From NCBI RefSeq assembly GCF_964204645.1, contig NC_134035.1, positions 13,238,451 through 13,302,450 on the forward strand: DNA of 64,000 bases. The letters are read 5' to 3'. Both the position numbers and the translations under genes were made by a program. The DNA is from Tubulanus polymorphus (taxonomy: Eukaryota > Animalia > Nemertea). Below, piece after piece: positions 1,173 through 27,990 of the stretch. Numbering within the stretch: the first letter of the stretch is position 1; every line of letters starts with the position of its first letter. Below the pieces are notes generated by a model. It searched no databases, was not told the origin of the DNA, and was given only the letters and a program-made list of their open reading frames with translations.

Positions 1173-1454
1173 CTCGGAATAGTTTCCCATAGACGAGTGA
1201 CTGTCTATATTTGAAACCTCTCGGAATAGTTTCCCATAGACGAGTGACTGTCTATATTTGAAACCTCTCGGAATAGTTTCCCATAAACGAGTGACTGTCT
1301 ATATTTGAAACCTCTCGGAATAGTTTCCCATAGACGAGTGACTGTCTATATTTGAAACCTCTCGGAATAGTTTCCCATAGACGAGTGACTGTCTATATTT
1401 GAAACCTCTCGGAATAGTTTCCCATAGACGAGTGTGACTGTCTATATTTGAAAG
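1173..1454. repeat. 47-bp tandem repeat, about 6 near-identical copies
   Basis: Unit CTCGGAATAGTTTCCCATAGACGAGTGACTGTCTATATTTGAAACCT starts at 1173, 1220, 1267, 1314, 1361 and 1408, with no spacers. Confidence 0.95.
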
Positions 1455-7825: not shown

Positions 7826-9748
7826 GTTCGAGCAATTTAAGTTCCCAATCAGAGTTTGCAAGACGCAAGTTTTGTGACAAAGCGAGTGGCGGTAACGGTA
7901 GCTAGCGTAGAGACGCGTAGACGGCTTGTTGCATCCCGTGTGTGACGTCACAGCGCGCACAGTCCACACGCAGCGGTAAGGTTTGACCTAACCAAAGAAA
8001 TAAGGGCCATCCCTAAACTATATGAACAAGGGTGGATCCGGGGGCTAATTATCAGGGGTGGATCCAGCTTACTTCTACTCTGCTGGAGCGGTACTCACGT
8101 GTGTAGTGCCCATCTATTTTCAAGTTCTGGCACGAGACATTTAAAATGGCAATCGAAAATGGGTAAACCTCTTATCTTAAATGAATAATTTTTAATTAAC
8201 AGGTTAAAACTTCATATTTTCTGGATGCAAAGAAGGATTTGATGCCCCAAATCGACTCAGATTGCATCAATCCCTGATTTTTTATGACATTATGTTCCCT
8301 TCCATAGCTGAACAGCACTCAGAAACCTAGGCTAGATGCGCCTCTGAACTTGTCAAATCCCAAAAGGGCACTTTGATGTCTAAAATGGCAGATGAAATAC
8401 AGGCTCTCATCTTGGAGTAATCATTGAATTACTCCAAGCTCTCATCGACCCAGCCAGGAGCCAGGATTTGTTAAGAATGGGTCCATATTCTGGCACGTGG
8501 ATAAGACACACAAGGGCTCAAAGTTAATTTCATGGTCAATTTTGATTCCATAGGATTTTTTTATCGACCTTCATTAACCCGCGTTATATCATCGAAACTA
8601 TATCAAATTGCACTTTACCGCGTGACCCTGTACGTAAATAGATCTTCGTCTAGATTCGAGGGTGACATTAATGTTCATATGAATGTATATATAGTATTCG
8701 AGGTCGAAGCGGGGGTTAGAATTCCACCTGTCATCGACGAATTGATCAGAAATTCTGGCGATATCGATTTTAAAGGTTTCATTCAGGAAGTTCTGTATCA
8801 ATTAAACCAATCAGCGACATCACGGAAACCATTAGAAAGCGGACGATGATTAACGAATGAATGGTCGCCTCCGACGAGCTCAATTTCACGTGTTATATAA
8901 CGTATCCTATTTATGTAATCATTATTTTCTTATCGCTATCAAAACAACTGTTCCATTTTTATCTTAAAATAGGGATTGTCCCTATGTTATTTATTTGATT
9001 AGTAAATTTCGTTAGACTTTCTTTTTTTTGATTGAGTGCTCCTTACAGACCCACCACACCTGTCGGGAGCGAAACAGGGGGTTTGATTTCGAAATCGGAA
9101 ATCGAAGTACAGATATAGTTGTGTGATCAGCGGTCGAGTTTATAAAAGTTTTTTGTTTAAATCGAAGTACCGATATAATTGGAAAATTCGGTTCCAGATC
9201 ACTCAAACAATCTGGCAAGCGACTGATTGGGGTCAACTTCCTTGGCTGCCTAATCTAAAACATCGATATTTTGGAAGTAGCTATATTGCAAGGTTGAAGA
9301 TCATTTCGTCCATTTTATATTTTTGGTCGTTTTCTACGTGTAAATCCGTAGTCCGATTGTTTATTTTAGTTTTTTCTCGGGTAGATGTTTATGTAGAAGT
9401 GCTCTAAGTTGATCGCCCCGCGTGTTGACTAGATTAAAGGAAGCACATTTCGAAATGCACAGTCCAAGGTCCGTTCCACTAGTACATAACACACCGGCGC
9501 TGATCACAGATAGACCTTGGAGTAATAAGTCTGATTCCAAGGATAGACAGACCAGACAGCAGCTGTCGATGATAACACTTACAAAAAACGGATTTCATAT
9601 TGACGCAAAAGATTCTATTACTCCGTCCTATTATTCACACTGTATAGTATATTGTATGCGTGCACGACGCTGGTGCGTTCATCGTAGATGATTCGAAATT
9701 GAAATAAAAATCGGATTATTCAAACACGTGTTTATAGAGACTGATAAA

Positions 9749-9856
9749 ATGACGATCGAAAAACGCGATGACTTCTATTTTGAGAACTGGTCGCGAACGT
9801 TTTCGTGTCGTCCTGAATTATATTTCACACCAGAAAATGAAGACCAGCTCAAACAG
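9749..9856 (+). other. GULO: Orphan duplicate of GULO exon 1 (alternative first exon or relic)
   Basis: ATG at 9749 gives [36 protein letters not shown], ending in an intact phase-0 donor CAG|GTAT and the start of intron 1. The sequence then jumps back into the promoter block at ~9911. Confidence 0.85.
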
Positions 9857-10354
9857 GTATATGTAATGTAGGCTCAACATTGTGATTATTTTTCTTGTAG
9901 AACCTTACAGAACTCTTGTCGATTGTAGATAGAAAAAACATTTTTTGTTACAACCACTCAAACTCTGTCGATTGAAGAAAGAAAAAACGTATTTTCTTTT
10001 GTTCAAATGTCAACCGTCAAACCGCTTTATATTCCTGTTAATATCGAAACTAGATTTACTCGCTGAACGACGTCGGAAAAGTGTTAAAAGTAATGGCGCA
10101 TGTTCTCTCGCGACTGTCTGAGTTTGGCTGAGAGACACAGCGACAAAAATTCGAAATTCAATTCTCCGTTTTAGAAGTGCATAGTTTATGTAAAATTTTT
10201 ATGTAACCGGATTTCATATTGAGGCCGCCGCATTTGTATTCCGTCGGTGGGAACTAACACTGGTATACTATATTGTGTGTGCACGAAATTGAAATAAATC
10301 ATCGGATAAAAGATCGGATTATTCAATGACGTGTTTCTAGCGACTGACGATAAA

Positions 10355-13300
10355 ATGGCGGCGATGGTCGAAATGACGGGCGAAAAATGCGATGACTTCT
10401 ATTTTGAGAACTGGTCGCGAACGTTTTCGTGTCGTCCTGAATTATATTTCACACCAGAAAATGAAGACCAACTCAAACAGGTATGTAATGTATGTAAGGC
10501 GGGTTTCAATTAGTCCCTTTAGATTCTGGAATCGTCCAAATACAATCTACCAATTCTGGATATAAGGTAATCGGGCTGGAACGCCTTAAACTAGATTAGT
10601 TTTATACGGCCATTGTCTGAAGCGGTCGGTAGAGAGTCTGGCAGGTTATGATTGGTCTCAACAGTTTCTGAACCAGAATGCACTCTCTACCTATTCCGCG
10701 ATTTCATAAACCGTAAACCTTATAGAAGCAACCGGTAGAGATTTTGATAGGTTTTTAATGGTTCGCACCGTTCTGGATTTCTTCTGACGCGTTCGTTTTA
10801 ACCAGAATACAAGTTCTACCTATTCGGGAATAGCGCAAATCTGTAAACCTGATAGAAGCGGCCGGTATATTGAAGCAAATGAAACAAACAACGAGGTGCT
10901 TTTGAAATAGACTCGAGTCTAAGCACCGAATAGTCTATGAGTTTTTCTCCATAATCGTGGTTTTGATCTTCAAAACGCAGCACACCGAATGTACTCTAAG
11001 CTCACGCCGAGGGCTATTCGCAAATTAAAACAGATATAAATCTTTAGACGTTAATTAGTTAAACAAATATTGTGGTGAAATGAACTCTGTCGGGATAAGT
11101 TACGACACTATCGAACTGAGTCACAAAAATGTACTACTTATCAATTATTTAACTGTAGTAAAGGACCCTGTTCCAGAACTGTGGAACTGAGTCCAGAACC
11201 GTGGAACTGAGTCCAGAACTGTGGAACTGAGTCCAGAACTGTGGAACTGAGTCCAGAACTGTGGAACTGAGTACAGAACTGTGGAACTGAGTCCAGAACT
11301 GTGGAACTGACTCCAGAACTGTGGAACTGAGTCCAGAACTGTGGAACTGAGTCCAGAACTGTGGAACTGAGTACAGAACTGTGGAACTGAGTCCAGAACT
11401 GTGGAACTGAGTCCAGAACTGTGGAACTGAGTCCAGAACTGTGGAACTGAGTACAGAACTGTGGAACTGAGTCCAGAACTGTGGAACTGAGTCCAGAACT
11501 GTGGAACTGAGTACAGAACTGTGGAACTGAGTCCAGAACTGTGGAACTGAGTCCAGAACTGTGGAACTGAGTCCAGAACTGTGGAACTGAGTACAGAACT
11601 GTGGAACTGAGTCCAGAACTGTGGAACTGAGTACAGAACTGTGGAACTGAGTCCAGAACTGTGAAACTGGAACCTGAACTGTGGATCTGGGTTCAGGACT
11701 GTGGATCTGAGTCCAGAACTGTGGAACTGGAACCTGAACTGTGGATCTGGGTTCAGGACTGTGGATCTGAGTCCAGAACTGTGGAACTGAGTCCAGAACT
11801 GTGGAACTGGAACCTGAACTGTGGATCTGGGTTCAGGACTGTAGATCTGAGTCCAGAACTGTGGAACTGAGTCCACAACAGTGGAACTGGATTTCTTATT
11901 TTGTATGATGTATGTAGTCTAGTACAACACCCACTTAAAAATACCACTGATAAACAAATATCATTGGGAACTAAATATGATTAGAACATTTGGAGACAAA
12001 ATTGATAAAAACCTAATCCAAATTTTGTATCTAAGGCGGCCAGCCTTGCAAGGATTCGATCTCGGACCTCTAGTCTATAATGCAGTGGTCTCAACCATTC
12101 GGCCAAGCTGACCGGTGTGATTGCTGACGTGCTCGACTGGAATTCATAGAGTGGAATCTCCAGTGACGTCATTATTCATTTGAATGGGAATCTCCTCATG
12201 TATGTCCCACAACTATCCATCCAGAACAGAACAACCAATCAATTCTAGAATCACAGTCCCCTTTATTAAAACAAATAAAACAACTAATCTAATCTCGAAA
12301 TCGTATCGAATACTTGTTGTTTGCGACAAAGTCACATGCAGACAAATATTGACCGTATTGAAAATGTTGTGTGGAAATCTTGAGTACTCGCGGTACTCAA
12401 GATCCGCCAATCTGGTAAAAAACTATGGACCTCGGTCCAAATTTACGGGATAAATGGTTTAAACATTGTGATTATTTTTCTTGTAGAACCTTACAGAACT
12501 TTATACAGATATTGTTTAAATTTATTTCTATATAACAGATATTAAGGTTAGCAGTTGACGAAGGCAGGACTGTTAAAGTGGTCGGACTGGGTCGATCGCC
12601 CTCCGATATCGCTTGTACCAATGAATACATGATATCTCTACAAAAATTCGATCGAGTCGTTGAAGTAAGTTAGAAAATCTGTGAACTGTAGACATTTCAA
12701 GCCTTTAAAACCTGGAGAAAATAAATAATCTGGTCTCGAGGGAAGATTTCTGAGAATCCAGTAAGAACTCCATCCCCGAATAACAGTTTCATTAGTGATA
12801 TAAACACGAGCACATAAACGCCTATATCATCACAAAACTGATGAAACTTTAATGAAATGTTAATTCACTCCCTGAAACGACTTTACTTATATATTTCAGT
12901 TCATCAGTATTTGATCGTGCCAAAATATGAAATACTCGATTTTCTTTTTCATTTTAAGGGATAAATATCCTTCTCATTTATTTCATTGAATTATTTTTGT
13001 GTTTTGATTTATCCTGATTTGGTGAGTTCCTTCAGAAATTCACCAGTCACACACCTACCGCTAACGAAACAGAATATTTCATTTTCTAAATCGGAAATCG
13101 AAGTACAGATAATATTAGAACTTGTAGATACATCTGACACGTGATAAATAAGACAGTGTCAGACATCTTATCGTTTACAGTTTGAGTACATATTAACAAC
13201 ATGAATGTGTCTAGTCATGTGACAAACACTATCATATTTAAATACTATCACGTATGACATGTTTTTATTTTTCTCTTATAACAGATTGATAATGAGAAGT

Positions 13301-16300
13301 TCACTTGTACCGCAATGGCCGGTATTTCAATTGAGCAACTCAATCACATCCTGAAAGATAGTGGTTTATCTCTCAGTCAGTAAGTATACCCCCTCGGCCC
13401 ACGTGTCCAGTCACCCAGTCACCTAGTCACCCAGTCACCCAGTCACCCAGTCATCCAGTCACCCAGTCACCCAGTCACCCAGTCGTCCAGTCATCCAGTC
13501 GTCCAGTCACCCAGTCACCCAGTCACCCGGTCATCCAGTCATCCAGTCACCCAGTCACCCAGTCACCCAGTCGTCCAGTCATCCAGTCATCCAGTCACCC
13601 AGTCAACCAGTCACCCAGTCAACCAGTCACCCGGTCACCCAGTCATCCAGTCACCCAGTCACCCAGTCACCCAGTCACCCGGTCACCCAGTCAACCAGTC
13701 ATGAAATGTTTTTTTTTTTATTTACAATTCAATGACTATTATATACGTATTAGCATTATTATTATCTGTAGATTACCAGCGATATCGGATATTTCATTAG
13801 CCGGGTTTATATCAACTGCAGTTCACGGTACCGGAGCTAAATTCGGTGTCTGTTCGACAAACGTGAGTTTAATCTGTGAATTATCATCAATCAACCAAAC
13901 TCTAGAAAGCAATCTCAAACACATTCTGTCCGATGTTCAATTGATCTGTGGTGAAGTAAAGGAAATGCACCCACCCCTTTACCACCCGATACGCACTTTC
14001 TACGATAAAAGATCCAGAACTAAAACAAGCACCTAATTTCACAGTTGCTGGTTCAGTTTGACCGGAATGGAATTAGTTGAAGCAATTTCCAATCGCGTTG
14101 TGTTTATTCGATATCATTTCTAAGGCTACAAAATGATACCTCGTTTCTCCGCAGCGGCCGGCTGATTTTCCAAAAATTTGATAAAATTTGTAATCAGTTC
14201 ATTTCATGGTTAGTTTGATTATGATTTAAAACAAACGTATGTATACAGGGGTAGAGATAGGCCGGGTCAACTTCTAAGCTCAGCAGGCGGAGAATAAGAT
14301 ATCAGCATTATATTGCCTTAACCTATAAGATCTTTAGAACCTGTCCCTTGCATGAAGAGTAATACATCTGTTATTATTGTTTTGGAAATATCAAATTGGA
14401 AATTTGCCACATAGATTGCTGTTTCTATATTTAATAAACCGATGTCACCGAAAATTTAATCTTAGGTAGATAACACAACAGTCACTTTTAAATCTATAAT
14501 TGACATTATATAAATTTGAGAGTAAAATCGTGATGTATCATTTTTTCAGGTTTTAGAAATTGATTTGATGACGAGCGACGGTGAAATTATCCACTGTTCA
14601 CGAGACGAGAATAAAGACGTATTTCTAGCGGCTTGTTGCAGTTTAGGATCGTTAGGTGTCATCATCCGAGCTAAAATACAGTGCGAACCTATATTTAACC
14701 TACAGAGAATCACCTACCCGGTCAAACTGGACGATGTATGTGTGCCATATTTTATGTTCAGTTATATGTGAGAATTGTGATGAAGATTTTTCAAGATTAA
14801 AAGAATATTGAAGAGCCGTAGAATAGTGGCACCTCTGTAACGCGGAGAACGGATAATAAGTTTAAACCCACTTTAAATAGGTCACTAGAGATCATTGTCA
14901 GTCACCTGATGATATTTTACAGTTAATCTAATATCTGAAAGGGAGACATCTATCTAAATCCCATTAATTCATAGCTATTTTACTGGATATGGGGCTTAGA
15001 TAAATCTTGAAATAGTCGGGATAGCCCCCCCCCCCATCCCGGTAGACTCTGGCGTGAAGAATAGAAAATCCGTTTATAACCCACAATATACAGATATATA
15101 GAGTCTTTTGATTCTATTTCTTGAAAAATGAAATTAGTTTTTAATCTTTTAAATTCTGTATATGATCGGTTATAAACTTATTGAATATTGAGGATCTATG
15201 CGTATTTCGACTTCAGTTAGAAATTACCAATGATTTTCACAGTAAGTTGGCATCATTTTCAATATATTTTCAAGGTGCTTGAGAATTTAGACGCTCATTT
15301 GAACGCATCGGATCATTTCGAGTTTTTCTGGTATCCATACACCGAATATTGTATCGCCTTTCACAACAAACGGACTGATGCTGAAAAGGTATATACATCG
15401 TTACATCTCCTCTAGAAATATTCATCTTTGAATAATGTCTCCATTCTAATATCTTTGACACGTGTTTTAACAGACAAAAACTAAAGCAAGTTGGTTCAGA
15501 CGGATTTTCATCGGATACTATCTACTGGAGCTTTTATATTGGTTCAGGTAAATTAATCAGTCTGGAGCCCGGGCCGTTATAACCCTCAGCCTGGGCTGCG
15601 TGAGAGCCCCGTCTTCACATGTGGTGTTCAGAACTTAACCTGAGACATTTTTGATTAGAAATGAACGAACACCAGATTGACGAGGATTCCAGACTGTAAC
15701 ACCTTTATAACGCCATAAGCCTAGAAAGGTTGCGTGGAAGAATCGTTTACACGTTCTTCTTTAGATAACCATTTTCTAAATGCACAATACCAAACAAAAG
15801 GTGCAACGTTGACAATATTGTCAACTGTTGTTTTATATATTTCCAGTTCATTTGTGCCGAGTTTAACTAGATACATCAATAGGCTGTATCTGTGGTTGAA
15901 TTCTGGTCACACGCGGACGGTAGACTGGTCGCCAAATATCTTCAACTTTGATTGTTTGATGAAACAATACGTGTTGGAATACTCGTTCCCGAGGTACGGC
16001 TCATTTCCCAAATAATCGATTATCTTACTGTAAGTTATCTTTCAATTTCAGGGAAAAGTTTAAGCGTTAAACGACTGAATTGTTGACCTCTCTGAAAACA
16101 CCAGGGGCTGCAGTTACTCACCTGTTGGTTTATAAGATAAATAGAATAAAAAGCTGGACCCGGGGTCCATTTCCAGGTTAATCTCATCTCATCTACTCGA
16201 TGATTATATCTACTAAACAAGTTTAAACGTCCGTGTCCATACACAGCTCACAGCTGAGCTGGTAGTTGACCAAATTATAACGCTAACGATTCCAGACCGT

Positions 16301-17458
16301 ATTTTAAAATGCTCCTCGAATCCGATAAAGCTGTGTAACTAGTCACTTTTGTAAAATGATTCTATAATTTTGTTTCTCGGTTTTTACAGAGATAAAACGG
16401 CGCTAGTTTTGAAAGAGTTACAAACTCGAATCATTCAGAATCATCACCAGGCGCATTTACCGATTGAAGTTCGGTTTGTGAAATCAGATGATATTTATCT
16501 GAGTCCGGCTTACGGCCGTGATTCTACATATATCAATATCATCAGCTACAGGTGACTACACAACTACTCATCTGCAGTTCAACTCTCCTCGCATCACTCA
16601 GTTCCTTTATGGACCCAGTTCCACAGGTCTGGAGCTAGTTCCAAAGTTCAGGGCCCACAGTTTGGCTCGACAGTTCTGGACCCAGTTCCACAGTTACTGG
16701 ACCCAATTCCACAGTTCTGGACCCAGTTCCACAGCTCATGACTTGCACAATTCCTTTATGGACCCAGTTCCACATCCCACTTCTAAAGTTCCACAGTTCT
16801 GGATGCAGTTCGACAGTTCTGTATTCAGTTCCGCTGGTCAGGATCCAGTTATATACCCGGGACCCCACAGTTCTACATTTCTTGGGCCTACTCCCAATCG
16901 GACCCAGGTCCATAGTCCATAATTCGGTTCAACGGTTCTGAGTCCTGCTAAACAATCATAGACCTTATTACGTGCACAGTTCTAAAAGCTTTCCTCAAAT
17001 TCTGCTCAGAACTGTGGAAGGAACTGAATGCAAACTGTTTAATTGTTTTAATTGACCGCGATCGTTACAGACCATATGGTAAAGCTATTCCACATTCTGA
17101 ATATTGGGCCGATTATGAGAAAATTGTACAAGAAATCGCTGGTAGACCGCACTGGGCGAAGGTAAGTTGAGGTCAGCAGACATTGCTGTATCATCGGAGT
17201 TCACTTAAAGCCACTATCTTACGCATTGAACCTGTGACACCAGTCATCAGGGAACCTCGATAACATTTGATATTCATGAAGTTTGATGTAGCTTTTCTTC
17301 CTTTTTGTTTATTGTAAATTGTCAAGGCGCACAGTATGGATTGTCATCAGCTGAAGCAACTCTACCCAATGTGGAATCAGTTCCACCGAGTTCGTGAGCG
17401 TTTAGATCCACGTGGAATATTCATGAATCGTTACCTGAGACAAGTGTTCGACAGTTAG
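10355..17458 (+). CDS. GULO: L-gulonolactone oxidase-like, copy 1 (447 aa, 11 exons)
   Basis: Exons 10355-10480, 12539-12664, 13285-13379, 13772-13862, 14550-14735, 15275-15388, 15474-15547, 15847-15993, 16390-16551, 17071-17161, 17327-17458. All introns are GT-AG and the 1344-nt frame is open. Motifs: [65 protein letters not shown] (VAO-family aldonolactone oxidoreductase). Confidence 0.95.
11163..11890. repeat. 20-bp minisatellite (CCAGAACTGTGGAACTGAGT)n in GULO-1 intron 1
   Basis: About 35 units. Related degenerate arrays occur at ~16610-16945, ~21850-22150 and ~27135-27440 (opposite orientation) and at ~62840-63010. Confidence 0.95.
12038..12113 (-). mobile_element. Degenerate tRNA-like sequence (pseudo-tRNA or SINE head)
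   Basis: Minus strand has an acceptor-like stem GGTCAGC...GCTGGCC, an A-box TGGCCGAATGG and a degenerate B-box GATCGAATCC. The anticodon stem does not pair. Confidence 0.6.
13407..13700. repeat. 9-bp minisatellite (CCAGTCACC)n in GULO-1 intron 3
   Basis: Tandem cagtcaccc/cagtcatcc/cagtcgtcc units; orthologous arrays occur in copies 2 and 3. Confidence 0.95.
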
Positions 17459-18080
17459 AGAGGGAGAGAGAGAGCAATTCATTACTAAAGTCTATCTATT
17501 TTTGTCTGGGATCGATTTTTCTGAAATCTTTTAATCTATTAAACACGACCAGTGAAACTGTGCAGTCTAATCATTAACACTATTGTTTTTTTATTCAATT
17601 TACACTGTATTAAATGATCGCTAAAAAATCTTCTTTATTTCTCTCGTGTTGAAAGAGAAATGATCAACCATTTTTGAATTATTAACTGTTTTCATGGCTA
17701 AAAACGATGATTTTTAAAATGATTTGAAAATTATTCTAAAATGTTTGGCATGAAATCAATATTGTTAAGATTGATTAAGTTCGTAAAATGGAGTCTGATG
17801 CAAATGAGTTGAAGAAGACTTCTTTGGAAATGCTTCAATATCATATTCACTCATAACAGCGATGTATATTAACATTGATTGCTTAATTGATACTATCAGA
17901 TTATATAAACTAAATAAAATGCAAATATAGACAATATATGGTTAGTTGTTAGTCGTATGTGTGGTTTTAGGGGTCCAGACTCCTGCCTCCGTATCGAAAC
18001 ACTCTTTAAAACAGCGCCGACAGATTGGCGCGACCAGTGGAACTTTTCACCAACGAGGGCTGTTAGGCGAAGCTCATATA

Positions 18081-18257
18081 CAGTGGAACCTCGTTACTGC
18101 GAACTTCACGGGAACAGAAAATCTGTTCGTTATAACCGATAGTTCATTATGTCCAGTATGAAATCAATCGAATTGTCTTTCAACGGACAAAATGCTATAT
18201 TTGGTTTATCCGATGAAGAACCGTTGTATCCGAGTTGGTTGTTACGAGGTTCCACTG
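18081..18257. mobile_element. Tc1/mariner (pogo/Tigger-like) MITE
   Basis: TIRs CAGTGGAACCTCGT...ACGAGGTTCCACTG, preceded by TA. Second copy at 23324-23500, empty site at ~28505 after copy 3, related relic at ~33722-33952. Confidence 0.8.
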
Positions 18258-18807
18258 TGTACGCATTTTCCCGGCATTTGAACCATATGAAATTTCGTTG
18301 GAAAGTGTGCAAACAACCCGGTATCTATGATAGAGCAGTAACCGCGGGTGTGATTGCTTTAGAGGCTGATGTTCCGAAGAGTCTCTTCTCTTGTCGCTGA
18401 TGTATTACAGCAACAACTCAAACTCTTGTCGATTGAAGAAAGAAAAAACGTATTTTCTTTTGTTCAAATGTCAACCGTCAAACCGCTTTATATTCCTGTT
18501 AATATCGAAACTAGATTTACTCGCTGAACTACGTCGGAAAAGTGTTAAAAGTTCTCTCGCGACTGTCTGAGTTTGGCTGAGAGACACAGCGACAAAAATT
18601 CGAAATTCAATTCTTCGTTTTAGAAGTGCATAGTTTATGTAACATTTTTATGTAACCGGATTTCATATTGAGGCCGTCGTATTTGTATTCTATCCGTCGG
18701 TGGGAACTAACACTGGTATAATATATTGTGTGTGCACGAAATTGAAATAAATCATCGGATAAAAAATCGGATTATTCAATGACGTGTTTCTAGCGACTAA
18801 CGATAAA

Positions 18808-21800
18808 ATGGCGGCGATGGTCGAAATGACAGGCGAAAAACGCGATGACTTCTATTTTGAGAACTGGTCGCGAACGTTTTCGTGTCGTCCTGAATTATAT
18901 TTCACACCAGAAAATGAAGACCAACTCAAACAGGTATATGTAATGAAGGCTCAACATTGTGATTATTTTTCTTGTAGAACCTTACAGAACTTTACACAGA
19001 TTATGTTAACAGATATTAAGATTAGCGGTTGACGAAGGCAAGACTGTTAAAGTGGTCGGACTGGGTCGATCGCTTACCGACATCGCTTGTACCAATGAAT
19101 ACATGATATCTCTACAAAAATTCGATCGAATCGTTGAAGTAAGTTAGAAAATCTGTGAACTGTAGACATTTCAAGCCTTTAAAACCTGGAGAAAATAAAT
19201 AATCTGGTCTCGAGGGAAGATTTCTGAGAATCCAGTGAGAACCCCCTCCCCGAATAACAGTTTCATTAGTGATATTAACACGAGCACATAAACGCCTATA
19301 TCATCACAAAACTGATGAAGCTTTATTGAAATGTTAAGTCACTCCCTGAAACGACTTTACTCTTACTTTCTCTGATAACAGATTGATAATGAGAAGTTCA
19401 CTTGTACCGCAATGGCCGGTATTTCAATTGAGCAACTCAATCACATCCTGAAAGATAGTGGTTTATCTCTCAGTCAGTAAGTATACCCCCTCGGCCTGTG
19501 TCCAGTAACCCAGTCGTCCAGTCATCCAGTCACCCAGTCATTCAGTCACCCATTTATCCAGTCACCCAGTCGTCCAGTCGTCAAGTCATCCAATCGCCCA
19601 GTCGTCCAGTCACCCAGTCGTCCAGTCACCCAGTCGTCCAGTCATCCAGTCGTCCAGTCATCCAGTCACCCAGTCGTCCAGTCACCCAGTCATCCAATCA
19701 CCCAGTCGACCAGTCGTCAAGTCATCCAGTCACCCAGTCGACCAGTCACCCAATCGTCCAGTCAACCAGTCGACCAGTCGACCAGTAGCCCAGCCATGAA
19801 ATATATTTTCTTCTTTACAATTCTAATGATTATTATACATGTATTATTACTATTGTCTGTAGATTACCAGTGATATCGGATATTTCATTAGCCGGGTTTA
19901 TATCAACTGCGGTTCACGGTACCGGAGCTAAATTCGGTGTCTGTTCGACAAACGTGAGTTTAATCTGTGAATTATCATCTATCAACTTCTGTCCAATGTC
20001 CAATATTGAACAATTTACCATATATAGATTGCTGTTTCCATATTTAATAAACCGATGTCACAAAATACATATATATATAACTTAATAAATAACAGGGACT
20101 TGAAAGTCTGTAATTATGATATAAATCTGAGAGTAAAATCGCGATGTTTCATTTTTTCAGGTATTAGAAATTGATTTGATGACGAGCGACGGTGAAATTA
20201 TCCACTGTTCACGAGAGGAGAATAAAGACGTATTTCTAGCGGCTTGTTGCAGTTTAGGATCGTTAGGTGTCATCATCCGAGCTAAAATACAGTGCGAACC
20301 TATATTCAACCTACAGAGAGTCACCTACCCGGTCAAACTGGACGATGTATGTGTGCCATCTTTTATGTTCAGTTATATGTGAGAGTAAAATCGAAAATGA
20401 ACTGATTTTCACAGTAAGTTGGCATCATTTTCAATATATTTTCAAGGTGCTTGAGAATTTAGACGCTCATTTGAACGCATCGGATCATTTCGAGTTGCTC
20501 TGGTATCCGTACACCGGATATTGTATCGCCTTTCATAGGAAACGCACTGACGCTGAAAAGGTATATACATCGTTACATCTCCAGAAATATTCATTTTTGA
20601 ATCGTCTCCATTCTAATATCTCTGACACATTTGTTTTAACAGACGAATACTAATGCAAGTTGGTTCAGACGGTTTTTCATTGGATATTATCTGCTGGAAT
20701 TTCTATATTGGTTCAGGTAAATTATCAATCTGCAACCAGAGCCGTTACCGCCCTCAACCTGGGCTCCGTGAGAGACCTCCGCCTTCATATAAGTGTTCAG
20801 AATTTTACCTAAGATATTTTGAAAATGAACTGAAAATACCAGACAAAACATTTTATCAGCATACTTTCAAAAACTGATCGTCCACACTTCACATGTGTTC
20901 AGTGCTTCACCTGAGACATTTTTAATTGAAAATGAACTACAAACATCAGACATTAGACATTTTATCAGCACACTTTCACAAACTGATTGTCCACACGTCA
21001 CATGTGTTCAGTGCTTCACCAGAGACATTTCAATTGAAAATGAACTAACGCCAGATTGACGTGGATTCCAAATTGCAGATTGACACCTTCATAACGCCAT
21101 AAGCCTAGAAAGATTGCTTGGACAGTGGCGTTGGAAGTGCAGTTTTTCAACTGGAAAAATTGTTTATAGTAATACTTTCTTCTTTAGATAACCATTTTCT
21201 AAATGCGCAAAACCAACTAAAATCGTACAACGTTGATAACATTGACAACTGATATTTTATATATTTCCAGTACATTTGTACCGAGTTTAACTAGATACAT
21301 CAATAGGCTGTATTTATGGTTGAATTTTGGTCACACGCGGACGGTAGACTGGTCGCCGAATATCTTCAACTTTGAAGTTTTGATAAAACCAGACGTGATG
21401 GAATACTCGTTCCCGAGGTACGGCTCATTTCCCAAATAATCGATAACCTCTTACTTGGGATCAATTTCAGGGAAAAGTTTAAGCTTAAAACGGCTAAGTC
21501 TGAATTTGTTGACTTCATTGAAAACATCCAGGCCAACTATTTGTTGACCAAATTTTGACGCCAAGATTCCAGACCGTATTTCAAATCTCCTCGAATCCGA
21601 CGGTGCTGTGTAACTAGTCACTTTTGTAAAATGATTCTATAATTTTGTTTCTCGGTTTTTACAGAGATAAAACGGCGCTAGTTTTGAAAGAGTTACAAAC
21701 TCGAATCATTCAGAATCATCACCAGGCGCACTTCCCGATTCAAGTTCGGTTTGTGAAATCAGATGATATTTATCTGAGTCCGGCTTACGGCCGTGATTCT

Positions 21801-22703
21801 ACATATATCAATATCATCAGCTACAGGTGACTACACAACTACTCATCCACAGTTCCCCTGCCCAGTTCCATAGTTCCTTTACGGACCCAGTTCCACAGGT
21901 CTGGAGCTAATACCAAAGTTCAGGGCCTACAGTTTGGCTCAAAGGTTCTGTGGATCCTGTTCCACAGCTCATGACTTGCACAGTTTCTTTATGGACCCAG
22001 TTTCAAAGGCCCACTTCGAAAGTTCGACAGTTCTGTATTCAGCTCGGCAAGTCTGAATATTCAGTTCTATACCCGGGACCCCACAGTTCTACAGTTCTAG
22101 ACCTACTTCCAGGACCCAGGTCCACAGTCGATCTGATTCAACGGTTCTGAGTCCTGCTAAACAATCATAGACCTTATTACGTACACAGTTCTAAAAGCTA
22201 TCCTCAAATTCTGCTCAGAACTGTGGAAGGAACTGAATGTGTACAGCGGGTAAAATATTCATTGTTCCCAAGCGCGATCGAGATAAAGCGACATTTAATT
22301 TGTTCACTGTTACAGACCATATGGTAAAGCTATTCCACATTCTGAATATTGGGCCGATTATGAGAAAATTGTACAAGAATTCGCAGGTAGACCGCACTGG
22401 GCGAAGGTAAGTTGAGGTCAGCAGACATTGCTGTATCATCGGAGTTCTCATAAAGTCAGTATCTTACGCATTGAACCTGTGACACCAGTCATCAGGGAAC
22501 CTCGATAACATTTGATATTCATGAAGTTTGATGTAGCTTTTCTTCCTTTTTGTTTATTGTAAATTGTCAAGGCGCACAGTATGGATTGTCATCAGCTGAA
22601 GCAACTCTACCCAATGTGGAATCAGTTCCACCGAGTTCGTGAGCGTTTAGATCCACGTGGAATATTCATGAATCGTTACCTGAGACAAGTGTTCGACAGT
22701 TAG
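18808..22703 (+). CDS. GULO: L-gulonolactone oxidase-like, copy 2 (447 aa, 11 exons; altered active-site residues)
   Basis: Exons 18808-18933, 19013-19138, 19382-19476, 19863-19953, 20161-20346, 20447-20560, 20643-20716, 21271-21417, 21665-21826, 22316-22406, 22572-22703. Exon lengths equal copy 1; no stops or frameshifts. Motifs [28 protein letters not shown]. Confidence 0.93.
19502..19795. repeat. 9-bp CCAGTCACC-type minisatellite, GULO-2 intron 3
   Basis: Degenerate tandem cagtcgtcc/cagtcaccc units. Confidence 0.9.
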
Positions 22704-23323
22704 AGAGGGAGAGAGAGAGCAATTCATTACTAAAGTCTATCTATTTTTGTCTGGGATCGATTTTTCTGAAATCTTTAAATATTTTAAACACGACCAGTGA
22801 AACTGTGCAGTCTAATCATTAACACTATTGTTTTTTTATTCAATTTACACTGTATTAAATGATCGCTAAAAAATCTTCTTTATTTCTCTCGTGTTGAAAG
22901 AGAAATGATCAACCATTTTTGAATTATTAACTGTTTTCATGGCTAAAAACGATAATTTTTAATGATTTGAAAATAATTCTAAAATGTTTGGCATGAAATC
23001 AATATTGTTAAGATTGATTAAGTTCGTAAAATGGAGTCTGATGCAAATGAGTTGAAGAAGACTTCTTTGGAAATGCTTCAATATCATATTCACTCATAAC
23101 AGCGATGTATATTAACATTGATTGCTTAATTGATACTATAAGATTATATAAACTAAATAAAATGCAAATATAGACAATATATGGTTAGTTGTTAGTCGTA
23201 TGTATGGTTTTAGGGATCCAGACTCCGGCCTCCGTATCGAAACACTCTTTAAAACAGCGCCGACAGATTGGCGCGACCAGTGGAACTTTTCACCAACGAG
23301 GGCTGTTAGGCGAAGCTCATATA

Positions 23324-23500
23324 CAGTGGAACCTCGTTACAGCAAACATCGCGGGAACAGAAAATCTGTTCGTTATAACCGATAGTTCATTATGTCCAGT
23401 ATGAAATCAATCGAATTGTCTTTCAACGGACAAAATGCTATATTTGGTTTATCCGATGAAGAACCGTTGTATCCGAGTTGGTTGTTACGAGGTTCCACTG
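23324..23500. mobile_element. Tc1/mariner (pogo/Tigger-like) MITE, duplicated with the GULO unit
   Basis: Near-identical to 18081-18257, same TIRs. Confidence 0.8.
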
Positions 23501-24113
23501 TGTACGCATTTTCCCGGCATTTGAACCATATGAAATTCCGTTGGAAAGTGTGCAAACAACCCGGTATCTATGATAGAGCAGTAACCGCGGGTGTGATTGC
23601 TTTAGAGGCTGATGTTCCGAAGAGTCTCTTCTCTTGTCGCTCATGTATTACAGTAACCACTCAAACTCTTGTCGATTGTAGATAGAAAAAACATTTTTTG
23701 TTTCAACCACTCAAACTCTTGTCGATTGAAGAAAGAAAAAACTTCTTTTCTTTTGTTCAAATGTTAACCGTCAAACCGCTTTATATTCCTGTTAATATCG
23801 AAACTAGATTTACTCGCTGAACGACGTCGGAAAAGTGTTAAAAGTTATGGCGCATGTTCTCTCGCGACTGTCTGAGTTTGGCTGAGAGACACAGCGACAA
23901 AAATTCGAAATTCAATTCTTCGTTTTAGAAGTGCATAGTTTATGTAAAATTTTTATGTAACCGGATTTCATATTGAGGCCGTCGTATTTGTATTCTATTC
24001 CGTCGGTGGGAACTAACACTGGTATAATATATTGTGTGTGCACGAAATTGAAATAAATCATCGGATAAAAGATCGGATTATTCAATGACGTGTATCTAGC
24101 GACTGACGATAAA

Positions 24114-27100
24114 ATGGCGGCGATGGTCGAAATGACGGGCGAAAAACGCGATGACTTCTATTTTGAGAACTGGTCGCGAACGTTTTCCTGTCGTCCTGAA
24201 TTATATTTCACACCAGAAAATGAAGACCAGCTCAAACAGGTATATGTAATGTAGGCTCAACATTGTGATTATTTTTCTTGTAGAACCTTACAGAACTTTA
24301 CACAGATTATGTTAACAGATATTAAGATTAGCGGTTGACGAAGGCAGGACTGTTAAAGTGGTCGGACTGGGTCGATCGCTTACCGATATCGCTTGTACCA
24401 ATGAATACATGATATCTCTACAAAAATTCGATCGAATCGTTGAAGTAAGTTAGAAAATCTGTGAACTGTACACATTTCAAGCCTTTAAACCTGGAGAAAA
24501 TAAATAATCTGGTCTCGAGGGAAGATTTCTGAGAATCCAGTAAGAACCCCCTCCCCGAATAACAGTTTCATTAGTGATATTAACACGAGCACATAAACGC
24601 CTATATCATCACAAAACTGATGAAACTTTATTGAAATGTTAAGTCACTCCCTGAAACGACTTTACTCTTACTTTCTCTGATAACAGATTGATAATGAGAA
24701 GTTCACTTGTACCGCAATGGCCGGTATTTCAATTGAGCAACTCAATCGTATCCTGAAAGATAGTGGTTTATCTCTCAGTCAGTAAGTATATTTACCCCCT
24801 CGGCCTGTGTCCAGTAACCCAGTCGTCCAGTCATCCAATCGCCCAGTCGTCCAGTCACCCAGTCATTCAGTCACCCATTCACCCAGTCACCCAGTCGTCC
24901 AGTCATCAAGTCATCCAATCGCCCAGTCGTCCAGTCGACCAGTCGACCAGTCATCCAGTCACCCAGTCACCCAGTCACCCAGTCACCCAGTCATCCAATC
25001 ATCCAGTCACCCAGTCGTCCAGTCACCCAGTCATCCAATCACCCAGTCGACCAGTCGTCAAGTCATCCAGTCATCCAGCCATGAAATGTATTTTCTTATT
25101 TACAATTCTAATGATTATTATACATGTATTATCATTATCTGTAGATTACCAGTGATATCGGATATTTCATTAGCCGGGTTTATATCAACTGCAGTTCACG
25201 GTACTGGAGCTAAATTCGGTGTCTGTTCGACAAACGTGAGTTTATTCTGCGAATTATCATCAATCAACTTCTGTCCAATGTCCAATATTGAACAATTTAC
25301 CATATATAGATTGCTGTTTATTAAGTAATATATATGTATTTTGTGTGACATCGGTCTTTCAAATATGGAAATAACAGTCACTTTTAAATCTATAATTGAT
25401 TATATAAATCTGAGGGTAAAATTGTGATGTATCATTTTTTTCAGGTATTAGAAATTGATTTGATGACGAGCGACGGTGAAATTATCCACTGTTCACGAGA
25501 CGAGAATAAAGACGTATTTCTAGCGGCTTGTTGCAGTTTAGGATCGTTAGGTGTCATCATCCGAGCTAAAATACAGTGCGAACCTATATTCAACCTACAG
25601 AGAGTCACCTACCCGGTCAAACTGGACGATGTACGTCGGCCATCTTTTATGTTCAGTTATATGTGAGAGTAAAATCGAAAATGAAATGATTTTCACAGTA
25701 AGTTGGCATCATTTTCAATATATTTTCAAGGTGCTTGAGAATTTAGACGCTCATTTGAACGCATCGGATCATTTCGAGTTGCTCTGGTATCCGTACACCG
25801 AATATTGTATCGCCTTTCATAGGAAACGCACTGATGCTGAAAAGGTATATACATCGTTACATCTCCTCTAGAAATATTCATCTTTGAATAATGTCTCCAT
25901 TCTTATATCTCTGACACGTGTTTTAACAGACAAAAACTAAAGCAAGTTGGTTCAGACGGTTTTTCATTGGATATTATCTGCTGGAATTTCTATATTGGTT
26001 CAGGTAAATTATCAATCTGCAACCAGAGCCGTTACCGCCCTCAACCTGGGCTCCGTGAGAGACCTCCGCCTTCATATAAGTGTTCAGAATTTTACCTAAG
26101 ATATTTTGAAAATGAACTAAAAATACCAGACAAAACATTTTATCAGCATACTTTCAAAAACTGATCGTCCACACTTCACATGTGTTCAGAACTTCACCTG
26201 AGACATTTTTAATTGAAAATGAACTACAAACATCAGACATTAGACATTTTATCAGCACACTTTCACAAACTGATTGTCCACACTTCACATGTGTTCAGTG
26301 CTTCACCAGAGACATTTCAATTGAAAATGAACTAACGCCAGATTGACGTGGATTCCAAATTGCAGATTGACACCTTCATAACGCCATAAGCCTAGAAAAA
26401 TTGCTTGGACAGTGGTGTCTGAAGTGCAGTTTTTCAACTGGAAAAATTGTTTATAGTAATACTTTCTTCTTTAGATAACCATTTTCTAAATGCGCAAAAC
26501 CAACTAAAATCGTACAACGTTGATAACATTGACAACTGATATTTTATATATTTCCAGTACATTTGTACCGAGTTTAACTAGATACATCAATAGGCTGTAT
26601 TTATGGTTGAATTTTGGTCACACGCGGACGGTAGACTGGTCGCCGAATATCTTCAACTTTGAAGTTTTGATAAAACCAGACGTGATGGAATACTCGTTCC
26701 CGAGGTACGGCTCATTTCCCAAATAATCGATAACTTCTTACTTGGGATCAATTTCAGGGAAAAGTTTAAGCTTAAAACGGCTAACTTTGAATTTGTTGAC
26801 TTCATTGAATACATCCGGGCCAACTATTTGTTGACCAAATTTTGACGCCAAGATTCCAGACCGTATTTCAAATCTCCTCGAATCCGACGGTGCTGTGTAA
26901 CTAGTCACTTTTGTAAAATGATTCTATAATTTTGTTTCTCGGTTTTTACAGAGATAAAACGGCGCTAGTTTTGAAAGAGTTACAAACTCGAATCATTCAG
27001 AATCATCACCAGGCGCACTTCCCGATTCAAGTTCGGTTTGTGAAATCAGATGATATTTATCTGAGTCCGGCTTACGGCCGTGATTCTACATATATCAATA

Positions 27101-27990
27101 TCATCAGCTACAGGTGACTACACAACTACTCATCCACAGTTCCACTGCCCGGTTCCATAGTTCCTTTACGGACCCAGTTCCACAGGTCTGGAGCTAATAC
27201 CAAAGTTCAGGGCCTACAGTTTGGCTCAAAGGTTCTGTGGATCCTGTTCCACAGCTCATGACTTGCACAGTTTCTTTATGGACCCAGTTCCAAAGGCCCA
27301 CTTCGAAAGTTCGACAGTTCTGTATTCAGCTCGGCAAGTCTGAATATTCAGTTCTATACCCGGGACCCCACAATTCTACAGTTCTAGACCTACTTCCAGG
27401 ACCCAGGTCCACAGTCGATCTGATTCAACGGTTCTGAGTCCTGCTAAACAATCATAGACCTTATTACGTGCACAGTTCCAAAAGCTATCCTCAAATTCTG
27501 CTCAGAACTGTGGAAGGAACTGAATGTGTACAGCAGGTAAAATACTCATTGTTCCCAAGCGCGATCGAGATAAAGCGACATTTAATTTGTTCACTGTTAC
27601 AGACCATATGGTAAAGCTATTCCACATTCTGAATATTGGGCCGATTTTGAGAAAATTGTTCAAGAAATCGCTGGTAGACCGCACTGGGCGAAGGTAAGTT
27701 GAGGTCAGCAGACATTGCTGTATCATCGGAGTTCACTTAAAGTCAGTATCTTACGCATTGAACCTGTGACACCAGTCATCAGGGAACCTCGATAACATTT
27801 GATATTCATGAAGTTTGATGTAGTTTTTCTTCCTTTTTGTTTATTCTAAATTGTCAAGGCGCACAGTATGGATTGTCATCAGCTGAAGCAACTCTACCCA
27901 ATGTGGAATCAGTTCCACCGAGTTCGTGAGCGTTTAGATCCACGTGGAATATTCATGAATCGTTACCTGAGACAAGTTTTCGACAGTTAG
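24114..27990 (+). CDS. GULO: L-gulonolactone oxidase-like, copy 3 (447 aa, 11 exons; altered active-site residues)
   Basis: Exons 24114-24239, 24319-24444, 24687-24781, 25145-25235, 25445-25630, 25731-25844, 25930-26003, 26558-26704, 26952-27113, 27603-27693, 27859-27990. Frame intact, introns GT-AG. Motifs [28 protein letters not shown]. Confidence 0.93.
24811..25080. repeat. 9-bp CCAGTCACC-type minisatellite, GULO-3 intron 3
   Basis: Degenerate tandem units, as in copies 1 and 2. Confidence 0.9.

What the first reader, a model, noticed from the sequence alone, without database searches (positions are those of the whole stretch)
21361..21750. GULO copies 2 and 3 have a rewired substrate site (Cys->Val, Glu->Gln): candidate new enzyme
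Seen in sequence: copy 1 FNFDCLMKQYVLEY becomes [14 protein letters not shown] in copies 2 and 3, with 7 nucleotide changes in 9 codons, all non-synonymous (Cys307 TGT at 15953 to GTT at 21377/26664). HLPIEVRF becomes HFPIQVRF (Glu346 GAA at 16466 to CAA at 21741/27028), while the rest of exon 9 is identical apart from one silent change. Other shared changes flank the flavin site (RSPS->RSLT, LPA->LPV) and FEFFW->FELLW. Established knowledge: the equivalent residues of Arabidopsis GALDH (Cys340 in FDC; Glu386/Arg388 in PIEQR) govern lactone binding, and changing Glu386 shifts substrate preference. HWAK and the reading frames are intact. Inference: copy 1 retains ascorbate-type synthesis and copies 2/3 were selected for a different substrate, making this an undescribed neofunctionalised aldonolactone-oxidase cluster.
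Basis: partly seen in the sequence, partly recalled or inferred. Interest (0 to 1): 0.85.

Follow-up and report, generated by a model that had tools for sequence, protein, structure and literature searches.

The report
Ribbon-worm GULO copies with rebuilt pocket
A ribbon worm carries three side-by-side copies of the vitamin C-making enzyme gene, and two of them, still intact and kept by selection, have swapped exactly those residues that grip the sugar substrate, so they probably do a different but still untested job.

Summary
The window is from Tubulanus polymorphus (Nemertea). It holds three tandem GULO-family genes, each with 11 coding exons and 447 aa, all GT-AG, with no stops. They are identical to the RefSeq models XP_074659920.1 (c1), XP_074660284.1 (c2) and XP_074660609.1 (c3).

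Copies 2 and 3 share 21 residue differences from copy 1. Five of these fall on the 12 published active-site residues of aldonolactone oxidoreductases: P63L, A119V, C307V, Q311P and E346Q (P = 9e-5). Cys307, Gln311 and Glu346 are conserved in 126/127, 127/127 and 128/128 animal-type homologues.

The hydride-transfer residues (Arg348, Lys404, HWAK) and 47 of 48 other invariant positions are untouched. The c2-c3 comparison gives omega 0.18. Exons 8 and 9 are identical in c2 and c3 although the flanking introns differ.

So c2 and c3 are maintained genes with a specifically rebuilt substrate pocket, not decaying copies. Whether they have a new substrate, changed kinetics or no catalysis cannot be decided. 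No RNA data exist, omega above 1 is only weakly indicated in the loop (P = 0.04), and nothing has been assayed.

All three copies also lack the FAD-linking His, the oxidase Gly and Arg224.

Verdict: a new variant of a known kind, of moderate interest.

The parts
10355..17458 (+). Copy 1 (c1), GULO-family gene, 11 coding exons: 10355-10480, 12539-12664, 13285-13379, 13772-13862, 14550-14735, 15275-15388, 15474-15547, 15847-15993, 16390-16551, 17071-17161, 17327-17458. It encodes 447 aa and keeps the canonical substrate contacts Cys307, Gln311 and Glu346.
   Evidence: Splice sites and frames. Identical to RefSeq XP_074659920.1 (P0162). Pfam FAD_binding_4 and ALO.
9749..9856 (+). Duplicated alternative first exon of c1 (E1b, begins [11 protein letters not shown]), followed by a GT donor. 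It is used by RefSeq isoform X2 (441 aa).
   Evidence: P0272 = XP_074659921.1.
18808..22703 (+). Copy 2 (c2), 11 coding exons: 18808-18933, 19013-19138, 19382-19476, 19863-19953, 20161-20346, 20447-20560, 20643-20716, 21271-21417, 21665-21826, 22316-22406, 22572-22703. It encodes 447 aa with a remodelled pocket.
   Evidence: Identical to XP_074660284.1 (P0271). AlphaFold2 model pLDDT 95.3. Best structural match 8QNB.
24114..27990 (+). Copy 3 (c3), 11 coding exons: 24114-24239, 24319-24444, 24687-24781, 25145-25235, 25445-25630, 25731-25844, 25930-26003, 26558-26704, 26952-27113, 27603-27693, 27859-27990. It encodes 447 aa with the same remodelled pocket as c2.
   Evidence: Identical to XP_074660609.1 (P0270).
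21374..21400 (+). c2 codons 306-314, the gating-loop patch (E V L I K P D V M). Val307 replaces the loop Cys and Pro311 replaces the loop Gln. The same letters stand in c3 at 26661-26687. c1 has D C L M K Q Y V L at 15950-15976.
   Evidence: The loop corresponds to vGalDH residues 337-344. Cys is found in 126/127 and Gln in 127/127 animal-type homologues.
21741..21743 (+). c2 codon 346, CAA (Gln), in place of the invariant Glu of the P-x-E-x-R motif. c3 has it at 27028-27030. c1 has GAA at 16466-16468. Arg348 (21747-21749) is kept.
   Evidence: Glu is found in 128/128 animal-type and 91/92 more distant homologues and in essentially all of 150 representatives.
19073..19078 (+). c2 codons 63-64, Leu-Thr in place of Pro-Ser directly after the flavin-linking position. 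c3 has them at 24379-24384. c1 has CCC TCC at 12599-12604.
   Evidence: Pro is found in 127/127 and Ser in 126/127 homologues. Pro56 (mouse) is a listed active-site residue.
19870..19872 (+). c2 codon 119, Val in place of Ala, next to the oxygen-gatekeeper position. c3 has it at 25152-25154. c1 has GCG at 13779-13781.
   Evidence: It corresponds to mouse Ala112 and vGalDH Ser114 in the active-site table.
12593..12595 (+). Codon 61, Arg in place of the FAD-linking His, in all three copies (c2 at 19067, c3 at 24373). All three copies also have Pro118 (13776, 19867, 25149) in place of the oxidase Gly, and Glu224 (15320, 20492, 25776) in place of Arg.

Best explanation
In the nemertean Tubulanus polymorphus, a lineage-specific tandem triplication produced three GULO-family (aldonolactone oxidoreductase) genes. 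The gene was already atypical before it duplicated.

Copy 1 keeps the full set of residues that contact the lactone substrate. In the common ancestor of copies 2 and 3, the substrate-contact residues were replaced:
- the two gating-loop residues that close over the sugar (Cys to Val, Gln to Pro);
- the invariant Glu of P-x-E-x-R (to Gln);
- two residues beside the flavin (Pro to Leu, Ala to Val).

The FAD-binding scaffold and the Arg-Lys pair that drives hydride transfer were left untouched. Both copies have since been kept by purifying selection.

The most likely reading is that c2 and c3 are still FAD enzymes of the same fold and chemistry (oxidation of a hydroxyl next to a carbonyl), but with altered substrate recognition and gating: a less polar pocket without the carboxylate.

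Shown here: the gene structure, the substitutions, their location on published active-site positions, and the selective constraint. Inferred: retained catalysis and a changed substrate. Which substrate is unknown.
For: Gene models and identity:
- Three models of 11 exons and 447 aa, all GT-AG, no stops, identical to RefSeq proteins.
- These are the only GULO-like loci in the 268-Mb genome.

Placement of the changes:
- 21 shared c2/c3-versus-c1 differences. Five lie on the 12 active-site residues of Boverio et al. 2024, Suppl. Table 4: P = 9e-5, or 0.0013 with clustered changes as single events.
- Polarised with outgroups, 8 changes are derived in c2/c3 and 5 of those are active-site. Six are derived in c1 and none is active-site (Fisher 0.028).
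- Among 55 positions at least 95% conserved in 128 animal-type homologues, c2/c3 changed 4 of 7 active-site positions. They changed only 1 of 48 others, and that one (Ser64) adjoins Pro63 (Fisher 5e-4).
- The Cys-Gln-Glu-Glu-Arg-Asn-Ile-Lys contact set is otherwise invariant in all animal-type sequences sampled.

Structural meaning:
- In the substrate complex of vGalDH, gating loop 337-344 closes. Cys340 and Gln344 bind O1 and O5, and Glu386 H-bonds the ligand.
- Glu386 is needed for substrate binding and preference.

Selective constraint:
- c2-c3: 8 non-synonymous and 12 synonymous differences, omega 0.175, binomial P = 1.8e-4 against neutrality.
- Exons 8 and 9 are identical in c2 and c3, against 5.0 changes expected at the intron rate (P = 0.0065).

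Fold:
- The c2 model has pLDDT 95.3 and pTM 0.92. Its best match is 8QNB, with TM 0.89.
Against: - There is no expression evidence. The only public runs holding the locus are DNA contigs without splice joints, and no transcript contig encodes these proteins.
- Positive selection is not demonstrated. Gene-wide omega between c1 and c2/c3 is 0.27-0.31. The loop-local excess is marginal (P = 0.04), and 5 of 12 active-site changes is also roughly what full local relaxation could give.
- Glu to Gln at a residue invariant in 219 of 220 homologues could simply cripple catalysis.
- Gene conversion is active in the cluster: the 3' 1.36 kb is 98% identical between c1 and c2. It may distort the omega estimates.
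- The three adjacent changes at codons 306-307 may be one mutational event.
'Lines the pocket' therefore rests on alignment to the solved GalDH complex.
Confidence: 0.5

Rival explanations
1. c2 and c3 are catalytically weakened or dead 'pseudoenzymes'. They are kept for a non-catalytic role such as binding, scaffolding or assembly, with selection on the fold but none on the substrate contacts.
For: - The Glu is invariant in 128/128 animal-type and 91/92 distant homologues, and it is needed for substrate binding.
- Both loop contacts are lost as well.
- The fraction of active-site residues changed (5 of 12) is compatible with local neutrality.
- There is a precedent: plant GLDH sits in a respiratory-complex assembly intermediate (PDB 7A24, listed).
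Against: - 47 of 48 other invariant positions are intact, including Arg348, Lys404 and the His and Trp of HWAK. This is unexpected if catalysis had been abandoned.
- Exons 8 and 9, which carry the new residues, are themselves conserved between c2 and c3 (P = 0.0065).
Confidence: 0.2
2. c2 and c3 still oxidise L-gulono-1,4-lactone to ascorbate. They are isozymes with altered kinetics, regulation or oxygen reactivity, and the changes are partly compensatory within a lineage whose site was already rearranged (H61R, G118P, R224E).
For: - In the L-gulonolactone complex of the G413N GalDH variant, Glu386 swings to Arg219 and no longer H-bonds the ligand.
- Tubulanus has Glu at the Arg219 position in all copies, so Glu346 to Gln could relieve a charge clash.
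- Cys to Val also occurs in the Capsaspora protein annotated as L-gulono-gamma-lactone oxidase and in a Romanomermis homologue.
- The GULO-type Asn369 is retained.
Against: - Gln311 and Glu346 are never replaced in any other animal-type sequence sampled.
- Three ligand contacts were lost at once.
- c1 keeps all of these contacts despite the same H61R, G118P and R224E background.
Confidence: 0.2
3. c2 and c3 are young redundant duplicates on the way to becoming pseudogenes. The active-site hits are the first disabling mutations.
For: - No expression data exist.
- The duplicates are recent (dS about 0.09 to c1, 0.04 between c2 and c3).
- Disabling substitutions often precede stops.
Against: - Both copies keep 11 exons, every splice site and the full frame.
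- Omega between c2 and c3 is 0.18, significantly below 1.
- Exons are three times less diverged than introns.
- Two independent copies have kept the same derived site with no further changes.
Confidence: 0.08

Closest known systems
[quoted passage not shown]
   Same: The same two Pfam domains (FAD_binding_4 and ALO), the same length and exon-level collinearity. HWAK, Arg342, Lys398, Asn363 and Ile365 equivalents are present, with about 45% identity.
   Different: All three Tubulanus copies have Arg for the FAD-linking His54, Pro for the oxidase Gly111 and Glu for the conserved Arg at position 224. c2 and c3 additionally replace Pro56, Ala112, Cys300, Gln304 and Glu340.
Plant L-galactono-1,4-lactone dehydrogenase; solved ancestral vGalDH (PDB 8QMY, 8QNB, 8QNR; Boverio et al. 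2024, PMC11099136)
   Same: It is the best sequence and fold match among solved structures. Like GalDH, the Tubulanus proteins lack the covalent-FAD His and the Gly that enables reaction with oxygen. c1 shares Cys340, Gln344, Glu386, Arg388 and Lys456.
   Different: About 25% identity. c2 and c3 lack Cys340, Gln344 and Glu386. The Tubulanus proteins have the GULO-type Asn at the Gly413 position.
Romanomermis culicivorax (nematode) GULO-like protein A0A915ILK4 (P0077)
   Same: It has a partly parallel set of changes: no FAD-linking His (Tyr instead), Pro at the gatekeeper, and a loop reading E-V-x-I-K...M-E-Y with Val for the Cys.
   Different: It keeps the loop Gln and the invariant Glu, has HLAK instead of HWAK, and is only 38.6% identical to c1. 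Its function is also unknown.
Alditol oxidase (Streptomyces AldO, PDB 2VFR) and bacterial ALO-domain oxidoreductases
   Same: The same fold (TM 0.76-0.78), with the Glu, Arg and Lys retained. They show that this scaffold serves other polyol and lactone substrates with a different loop (Arg and Phe at the Cys and Gln positions).
   Different: About 20-37% identity. They keep the Glu that c2 and c3 have lost, and the c2/c3 loop is not of the bacterial type.

Membership tests
Aldonolactone oxidoreductases (VAO/PCMH flavoproteins with an ALO domain) | N-terminal FAD_binding_4 (PF01565) plus C-terminal ALO (PF04030) domain | tested here: met
   Exon-wise hmmscan of c2 found FAD_binding_4 on exons 2-3 and ALO on exons 6, 8, 9 and 10. 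Both domains are precomputed for the P0162 cluster, which contains c1, c2 and c3.
Aldonolactone oxidoreductases (VAO/PCMH flavoproteins with an ALO domain) | HWXK motif, and the Arg-Lys pair that stabilises the substrate 2-alkoxide (vGalDH Arg388 and Lys456) | tested here: met
   HWAK at 401-404 and Arg348 are present in all three copies. Their role is described.
Aldonolactone oxidoreductases (VAO/PCMH flavoproteins with an ALO domain) | Two-domain VAO fold | tested here: met
   The c2 model has pLDDT 95.3 and pTM 0.92. Foldseek's top hits are 8QNB, 8QNC and 8QMY with TM 0.85-0.89.
Canonical animal GULO (EC 1.1.3.8) | His for the 8-alpha-N1-histidyl covalent FAD link (mouse His54) | tested here: not met
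   Arg61 in c1, c2 and c3. His is found in 115 of 126 animal-type homologues.
Canonical animal GULO (EC 1.1.3.8) | Oxidase-enabling Gly at the flavin N5-C4a gatekeeper (mouse Gly111) | tested here: not met
   Pro118 in all three copies. Gly is found in 120 of 127 homologues. Its role is described.
Canonical animal GULO (EC 1.1.3.8) | Substrate-contact residues Cys300, Gln304 and Glu340 (mouse numbering) | tested here: not met
   c1 meets this feature (Cys307, Gln311, Glu346). c2 and c3 do not (Val, Pro, Gln). These are the only exceptions among the animal-type sequences sampled, apart from one Cys-to-Val in Capsaspora.
Canonical animal GULO (EC 1.1.3.8) | Asn at the GULO-versus-GalDH specificity position (mouse Asn363) | tested here: met
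   Asn369 in all three copies. Its role is described.
Canonical animal GULO (EC 1.1.3.8) | Oxidation of L-gulono-1,4-lactone to ascorbate with O2, producing H2O2 | not testable with these tools
   This needs a recombinant enzyme assay.

The most novel reading that the evidence does not exclude
c2 and c3 are the first animal GULO-derived paralogues to have acquired a new enzymatic function. They would be a flavin oxidoreductase that keeps the Arg-Lys hydride-transfer machinery but recognises a different, less polar or differently hydroxylated substrate. This would be achieved through a rebuilt gating loop (Val307, Pro311) and a neutralised Glu (Gln346). The change would have arisen by tandem duplication in a palaeonemertean whose ancestral enzyme had already given up covalent FAD and the oxidase Gly.
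Probability: 0.4. Interest if true: 0.7.

Novelty: new variant of a known kind. Interest (0 to 1): 0.52.

Why it matters
Aldonolactone oxidoreductases are described as having a 'remarkably well-conserved catalytic cavity' from plants to animals. In animals, GULO is usually discussed only as present or lost.

Here a natural, selectively maintained pair of paralogues replaces three ligand-contacting residues that are otherwise invariant, and a canonical-pocket sister copy lies 5 kb away. This offers a compact natural experiment with three proteins differing at 21-27 positions. It can show how substrate recognition, loop gating and flavin reactivity are encoded in this family.

It may also reveal an unknown metabolite-forming step in nemerteans. 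If the copies prove inactive, they show how a vitamin C enzyme is retired or re-used without losing its fold.

Tried and rejected
- A single-exon search of solved structures gave only spurious repeat-protein hits. It was replaced by a search with the full RefSeq protein.
- The first fragment alignment (A1) misplaced exons and was not used. A2 served only to reach full-length database proteins.
- Expression: the only three runs holding the locus (X1-X3) are DNA contigs that run through introns and show no exon-exon joints. Expression therefore could not be tested, and this says nothing about silence.
- Gene-conversion donor: the derived 33-mer occurs only in c2 and c3, and no fourth GULO locus exists. 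Import from another paralogue is rejected.
- Overall rate acceleration of c2 and c3 is rejected: 8 derived changes against 6.
- A branch-site dN/dS test could not be run. There is no codeml or HyPhy, and the nearest outgroups are at most about 55% identical in protein, so synonymous sites are saturated.
Mapping therefore rests on alignment to 8QNB and 8QNR and on the published contact list.
Exons were searched one by one by reference. The full-length steps used database proteins P0162, P0270 and P0271, which match the exon models exactly. Codon comparisons were made position by position from coordinates.
Full report
**What is there**

The window lies on contig 11 of a 268-Mb genome. The proteins it encodes are identical to RefSeq entries of Tubulanus polymorphus, a palaeonemertean ribbon worm.

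Between 9.7 and 28 kb on the + strand lie three tandem units. I built exon models from stop-free stretches, a spider GULO used as a tblastn guide, and the splice sites. Each copy has 11 coding exons with identical exon lengths, 1344 nt and 447 aa. All introns are GT-AG and there is no internal stop.

The models equal XP_074659920.1 (c1 = P0162), XP_074660284.1 (c2 = P0271) and XP_074660609.1 (c3 = P0270) residue for residue. A duplicated first exon at 9749-9856 gives c1 a second annotated isoform.

Exon-wise Pfam scans find FAD_binding_4 and ALO. Six-frame searches of the whole genome find no other GULO-like locus.

Full-length work used the database proteins returned by the searches.

**The observation**

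All quoted letters are correct.

- Codons 306-314 differ by 7 nucleotides, all non-synonymous: DCLMKQYVL in c1 and EVLIKPDVM in c2 and c3.
- Exon 9 differs by E346Q, L343F and one silent change.
- P63L, S64T, A119V, F225L and F226L are also shared by c2 and c3.
- In total, c2 and c3 share 21 residue differences from c1.

**Where the changes fall**

HMMER aligns c3 to the solved ancestral plant GalDH so that residues 304-311 correspond to its gating loop 337-344. In that alignment Val307 corresponds to Cys340, Pro311 to Gln344, Gln346 to Glu386, Arg348 to Arg388 and Lys404 to Lys456.

In the substrate complex, the loop closes over the lactone. Cys340 and Gln344 bind its O1 and O5, Arg388 and Lys456 hold O2, and Glu386 H-bonds the ligand. 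[quoted passage not shown]

The paper's table of 12 active-site residues maps to Tubulanus positions 61, 63, 118, 119, 307, 311, 315, 346, 348, 369, 371 and 404. c2 and c3 differ from c1 at five of them: 63, 119, 307, 311 and 346.

- Five hits among 21 differences in 447 residues has hypergeometric P = 9e-5. With clustered changes treated as single events, P = 0.0013.
- In 128 animal-type homologues, Pro63 is found in 127/127, Cys307 in 126/127, Gln311 in 127/127 and Glu346 in 128/128. Glu is also found in 91/92 more distant members and in essentially all of 150 library representatives.
- No other animal-type sequence departs from the Cys-Gln-Glu-Glu-Arg-Asn-Ile-Lys contact set, except for one Cys-to-Val in Capsaspora.
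- Another nemertean, Lineus longissimus, is canonical.

**Direction and selection**

With outgroups, 8 of the 21 differences are derived in c2/c3 (63, 64, 119, 225, 307, 311, 312, 346). Six are derived in c1 and seven are ambiguous. There is therefore no general acceleration.

The kinds of site differ, however. Five of the 8 changes derived in c2/c3 are active-site residues, against none of the 6 derived in c1 (Fisher 0.028).

Of 55 positions at least 95% conserved in the family, c2 and c3 changed 4 of 7 active-site positions. They changed only 1 of 48 others, namely Ser64, which adjoins Pro63 (Fisher 5e-4).

Nei-Gojobori estimates:

| Pair | dS | dN | omega |
|---|---|---|---|
| c1-c2 | 0.090 | 0.028 | 0.31 |
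| c1-c3 | 0.090 | 0.024 | 0.27 |
| c2-c3 | 0.044 | 0.008 | 0.175 |

The c2-c3 estimate rests on 12 synonymous and 8 non-synonymous differences, with P = 1.8e-4 against neutrality. Exons are three to four times less diverged than introns. Exons 8 and 9, which carry the new loop and Gln346, are identical in c2 and c3, although 5 changes are expected at the rate of the flanking introns (P = 0.0065). The derived site is therefore being maintained.

Evidence for omega above 1 is weak. The loop has 7 non-synonymous changes on about 21 sites against about 3.2 expected at the intron rate (P = 0.04). Three of the seven changes are adjacent and may be one event.

The centre of the unit is 84-91% identical between c1 and c2. 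The last 1.36 kb is 98% identical. Gene conversion therefore operates in the cluster and may blur these estimates. The derived patch exists nowhere else in the genome, so it was not imported.

**Fold**

An AlphaFold2 model of c2 is very confident (pLDDT 95.3, pTM 0.92). Its best match is the ligand-bound GalDH structure 8QNB, with TM 0.89.

**Background of the whole trio**

All three copies share three departures:

- Arg instead of the His that links FAD covalently;
- Pro instead of the Gly that makes GULO and ALO oxidases;
- Glu instead of the Arg (vGalDH Arg219) towards which Glu386 swings.

I confirm it and add the other two. Loss of the His or the Gly also occurs in ticks, mites, myriapods and a tardigrade. 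Even c1 may therefore be a non-covalent, dehydrogenase-like enzyme rather than a textbook oxidase.

**Interpretation**

The pattern has three parts: intact genes, purifying selection, and substitutions confined to ligand- and flavin-contacting residues, with the FAD scaffold and the Arg-Lys-His machinery preserved.

This fits best with a still-active flavoenzyme whose substrate recognition and gating were rebuilt (confidence about 0.5). It does not prove a new substrate. The alternatives are:

- a maintained but catalytically weakened protein (0.2);
- an ascorbate-making isozyme whose changes compensate for the lineage's rearranged site (0.2);
- early decay (0.08).

Expression could not be examined. 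The only public runs with this locus are DNA. I found no paper on GULO duplicates in Tubulanus or on such a variant.

A nematode protein (Romanomermis culicivorax A0A915ILK4) shows a partly parallel loop (E-V-x-I-K...M-E-Y), Pro at the gatekeeper and no His, but it keeps the Gln and the Glu.

**Verdict**

The finding is a new variant of a known enzyme family, of moderate interest, and can be decided by expression profiling and a simple enzyme panel.

Noticed in passing
window 12593-12595, 13776-13778, 15320-15322 (c1); 19067, 19867, 20492 (c2); 24373, 25149, 25776 (c3): All three copies carry three shared departures. Arg replaces the FAD-linking His. Pro replaces the oxidase-enabling Gly. Glu replaces the conserved Arg (R/K in 124/125 animal-type homologues) that pairs with the catalytic-site Glu. 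The ancestral Tubulanus enzyme may therefore be a non-covalent, dehydrogenase-like GULO.
   Followed up: partly
window 9749-9856: A duplicated first coding exon lies upstream of c1 and has a GT donor. RefSeq isoform X2 (441 aa) uses it. It is a fourth partial copy of the 5' end of the unit (9616-9915 resembles 10240-10539).
   Followed up: partly
window 17064-18420 versus 22309-23663: The last 1.36 kb of the unit (exons 10-11 and the 3' flank) is 98.2% identical between c1 and c2, whereas the centre of the gene is 84-91% identical. This indicates recent gene conversion or homogenisation at the 3' end.
   Followed up: partly
window 13407-13701, 19501-19793, 24810-25082: Intron 3 of every copy holds a roughly 280-nt array of an 8-nt unit (CCAGTCAC, with a higher-order period of 40). 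It stays open in all three frames and mimics a long ORF.
   Followed up: no
window 20819-21048 and 26106-26335: Intron 7 of c2 and c3 (554 nt, against 299 nt in c1) contains two 109-nt repeat units. Their word depth in the DNA contigs is enormous (about 110,000 in X1), so this is a very high-copy dispersed repeat inserted after the split from c1. Bins 16600-16799 and 18000-18199 are also repeat-rich.
   Followed up: partly
window 11172-11889: A tandem array of 36 copies of a 20-nt unit lies inside the 2-kb intron 1 of c1. Intron 1 is only 79 nt in c2 and c3.
   Followed up: no
window 1169-1453, 36283-36847, 38615-39380, 47963-48456: Further satellite-like tandem arrays (periods 47, 73, 106 and 47/98 nt) lie outside the GULO cluster.
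   Followed up: no
P0077 (Romanomermis culicivorax, UniRef A0A915ILK4), not in the window: A nematode GULO-like protein shows parallel departures: Tyr for the FAD His, Pro at the gatekeeper, Val for the loop Cys, and HLAK. This is of interest because nematodes are reported to make ascorbate without a known GULO.
   Followed up: partly
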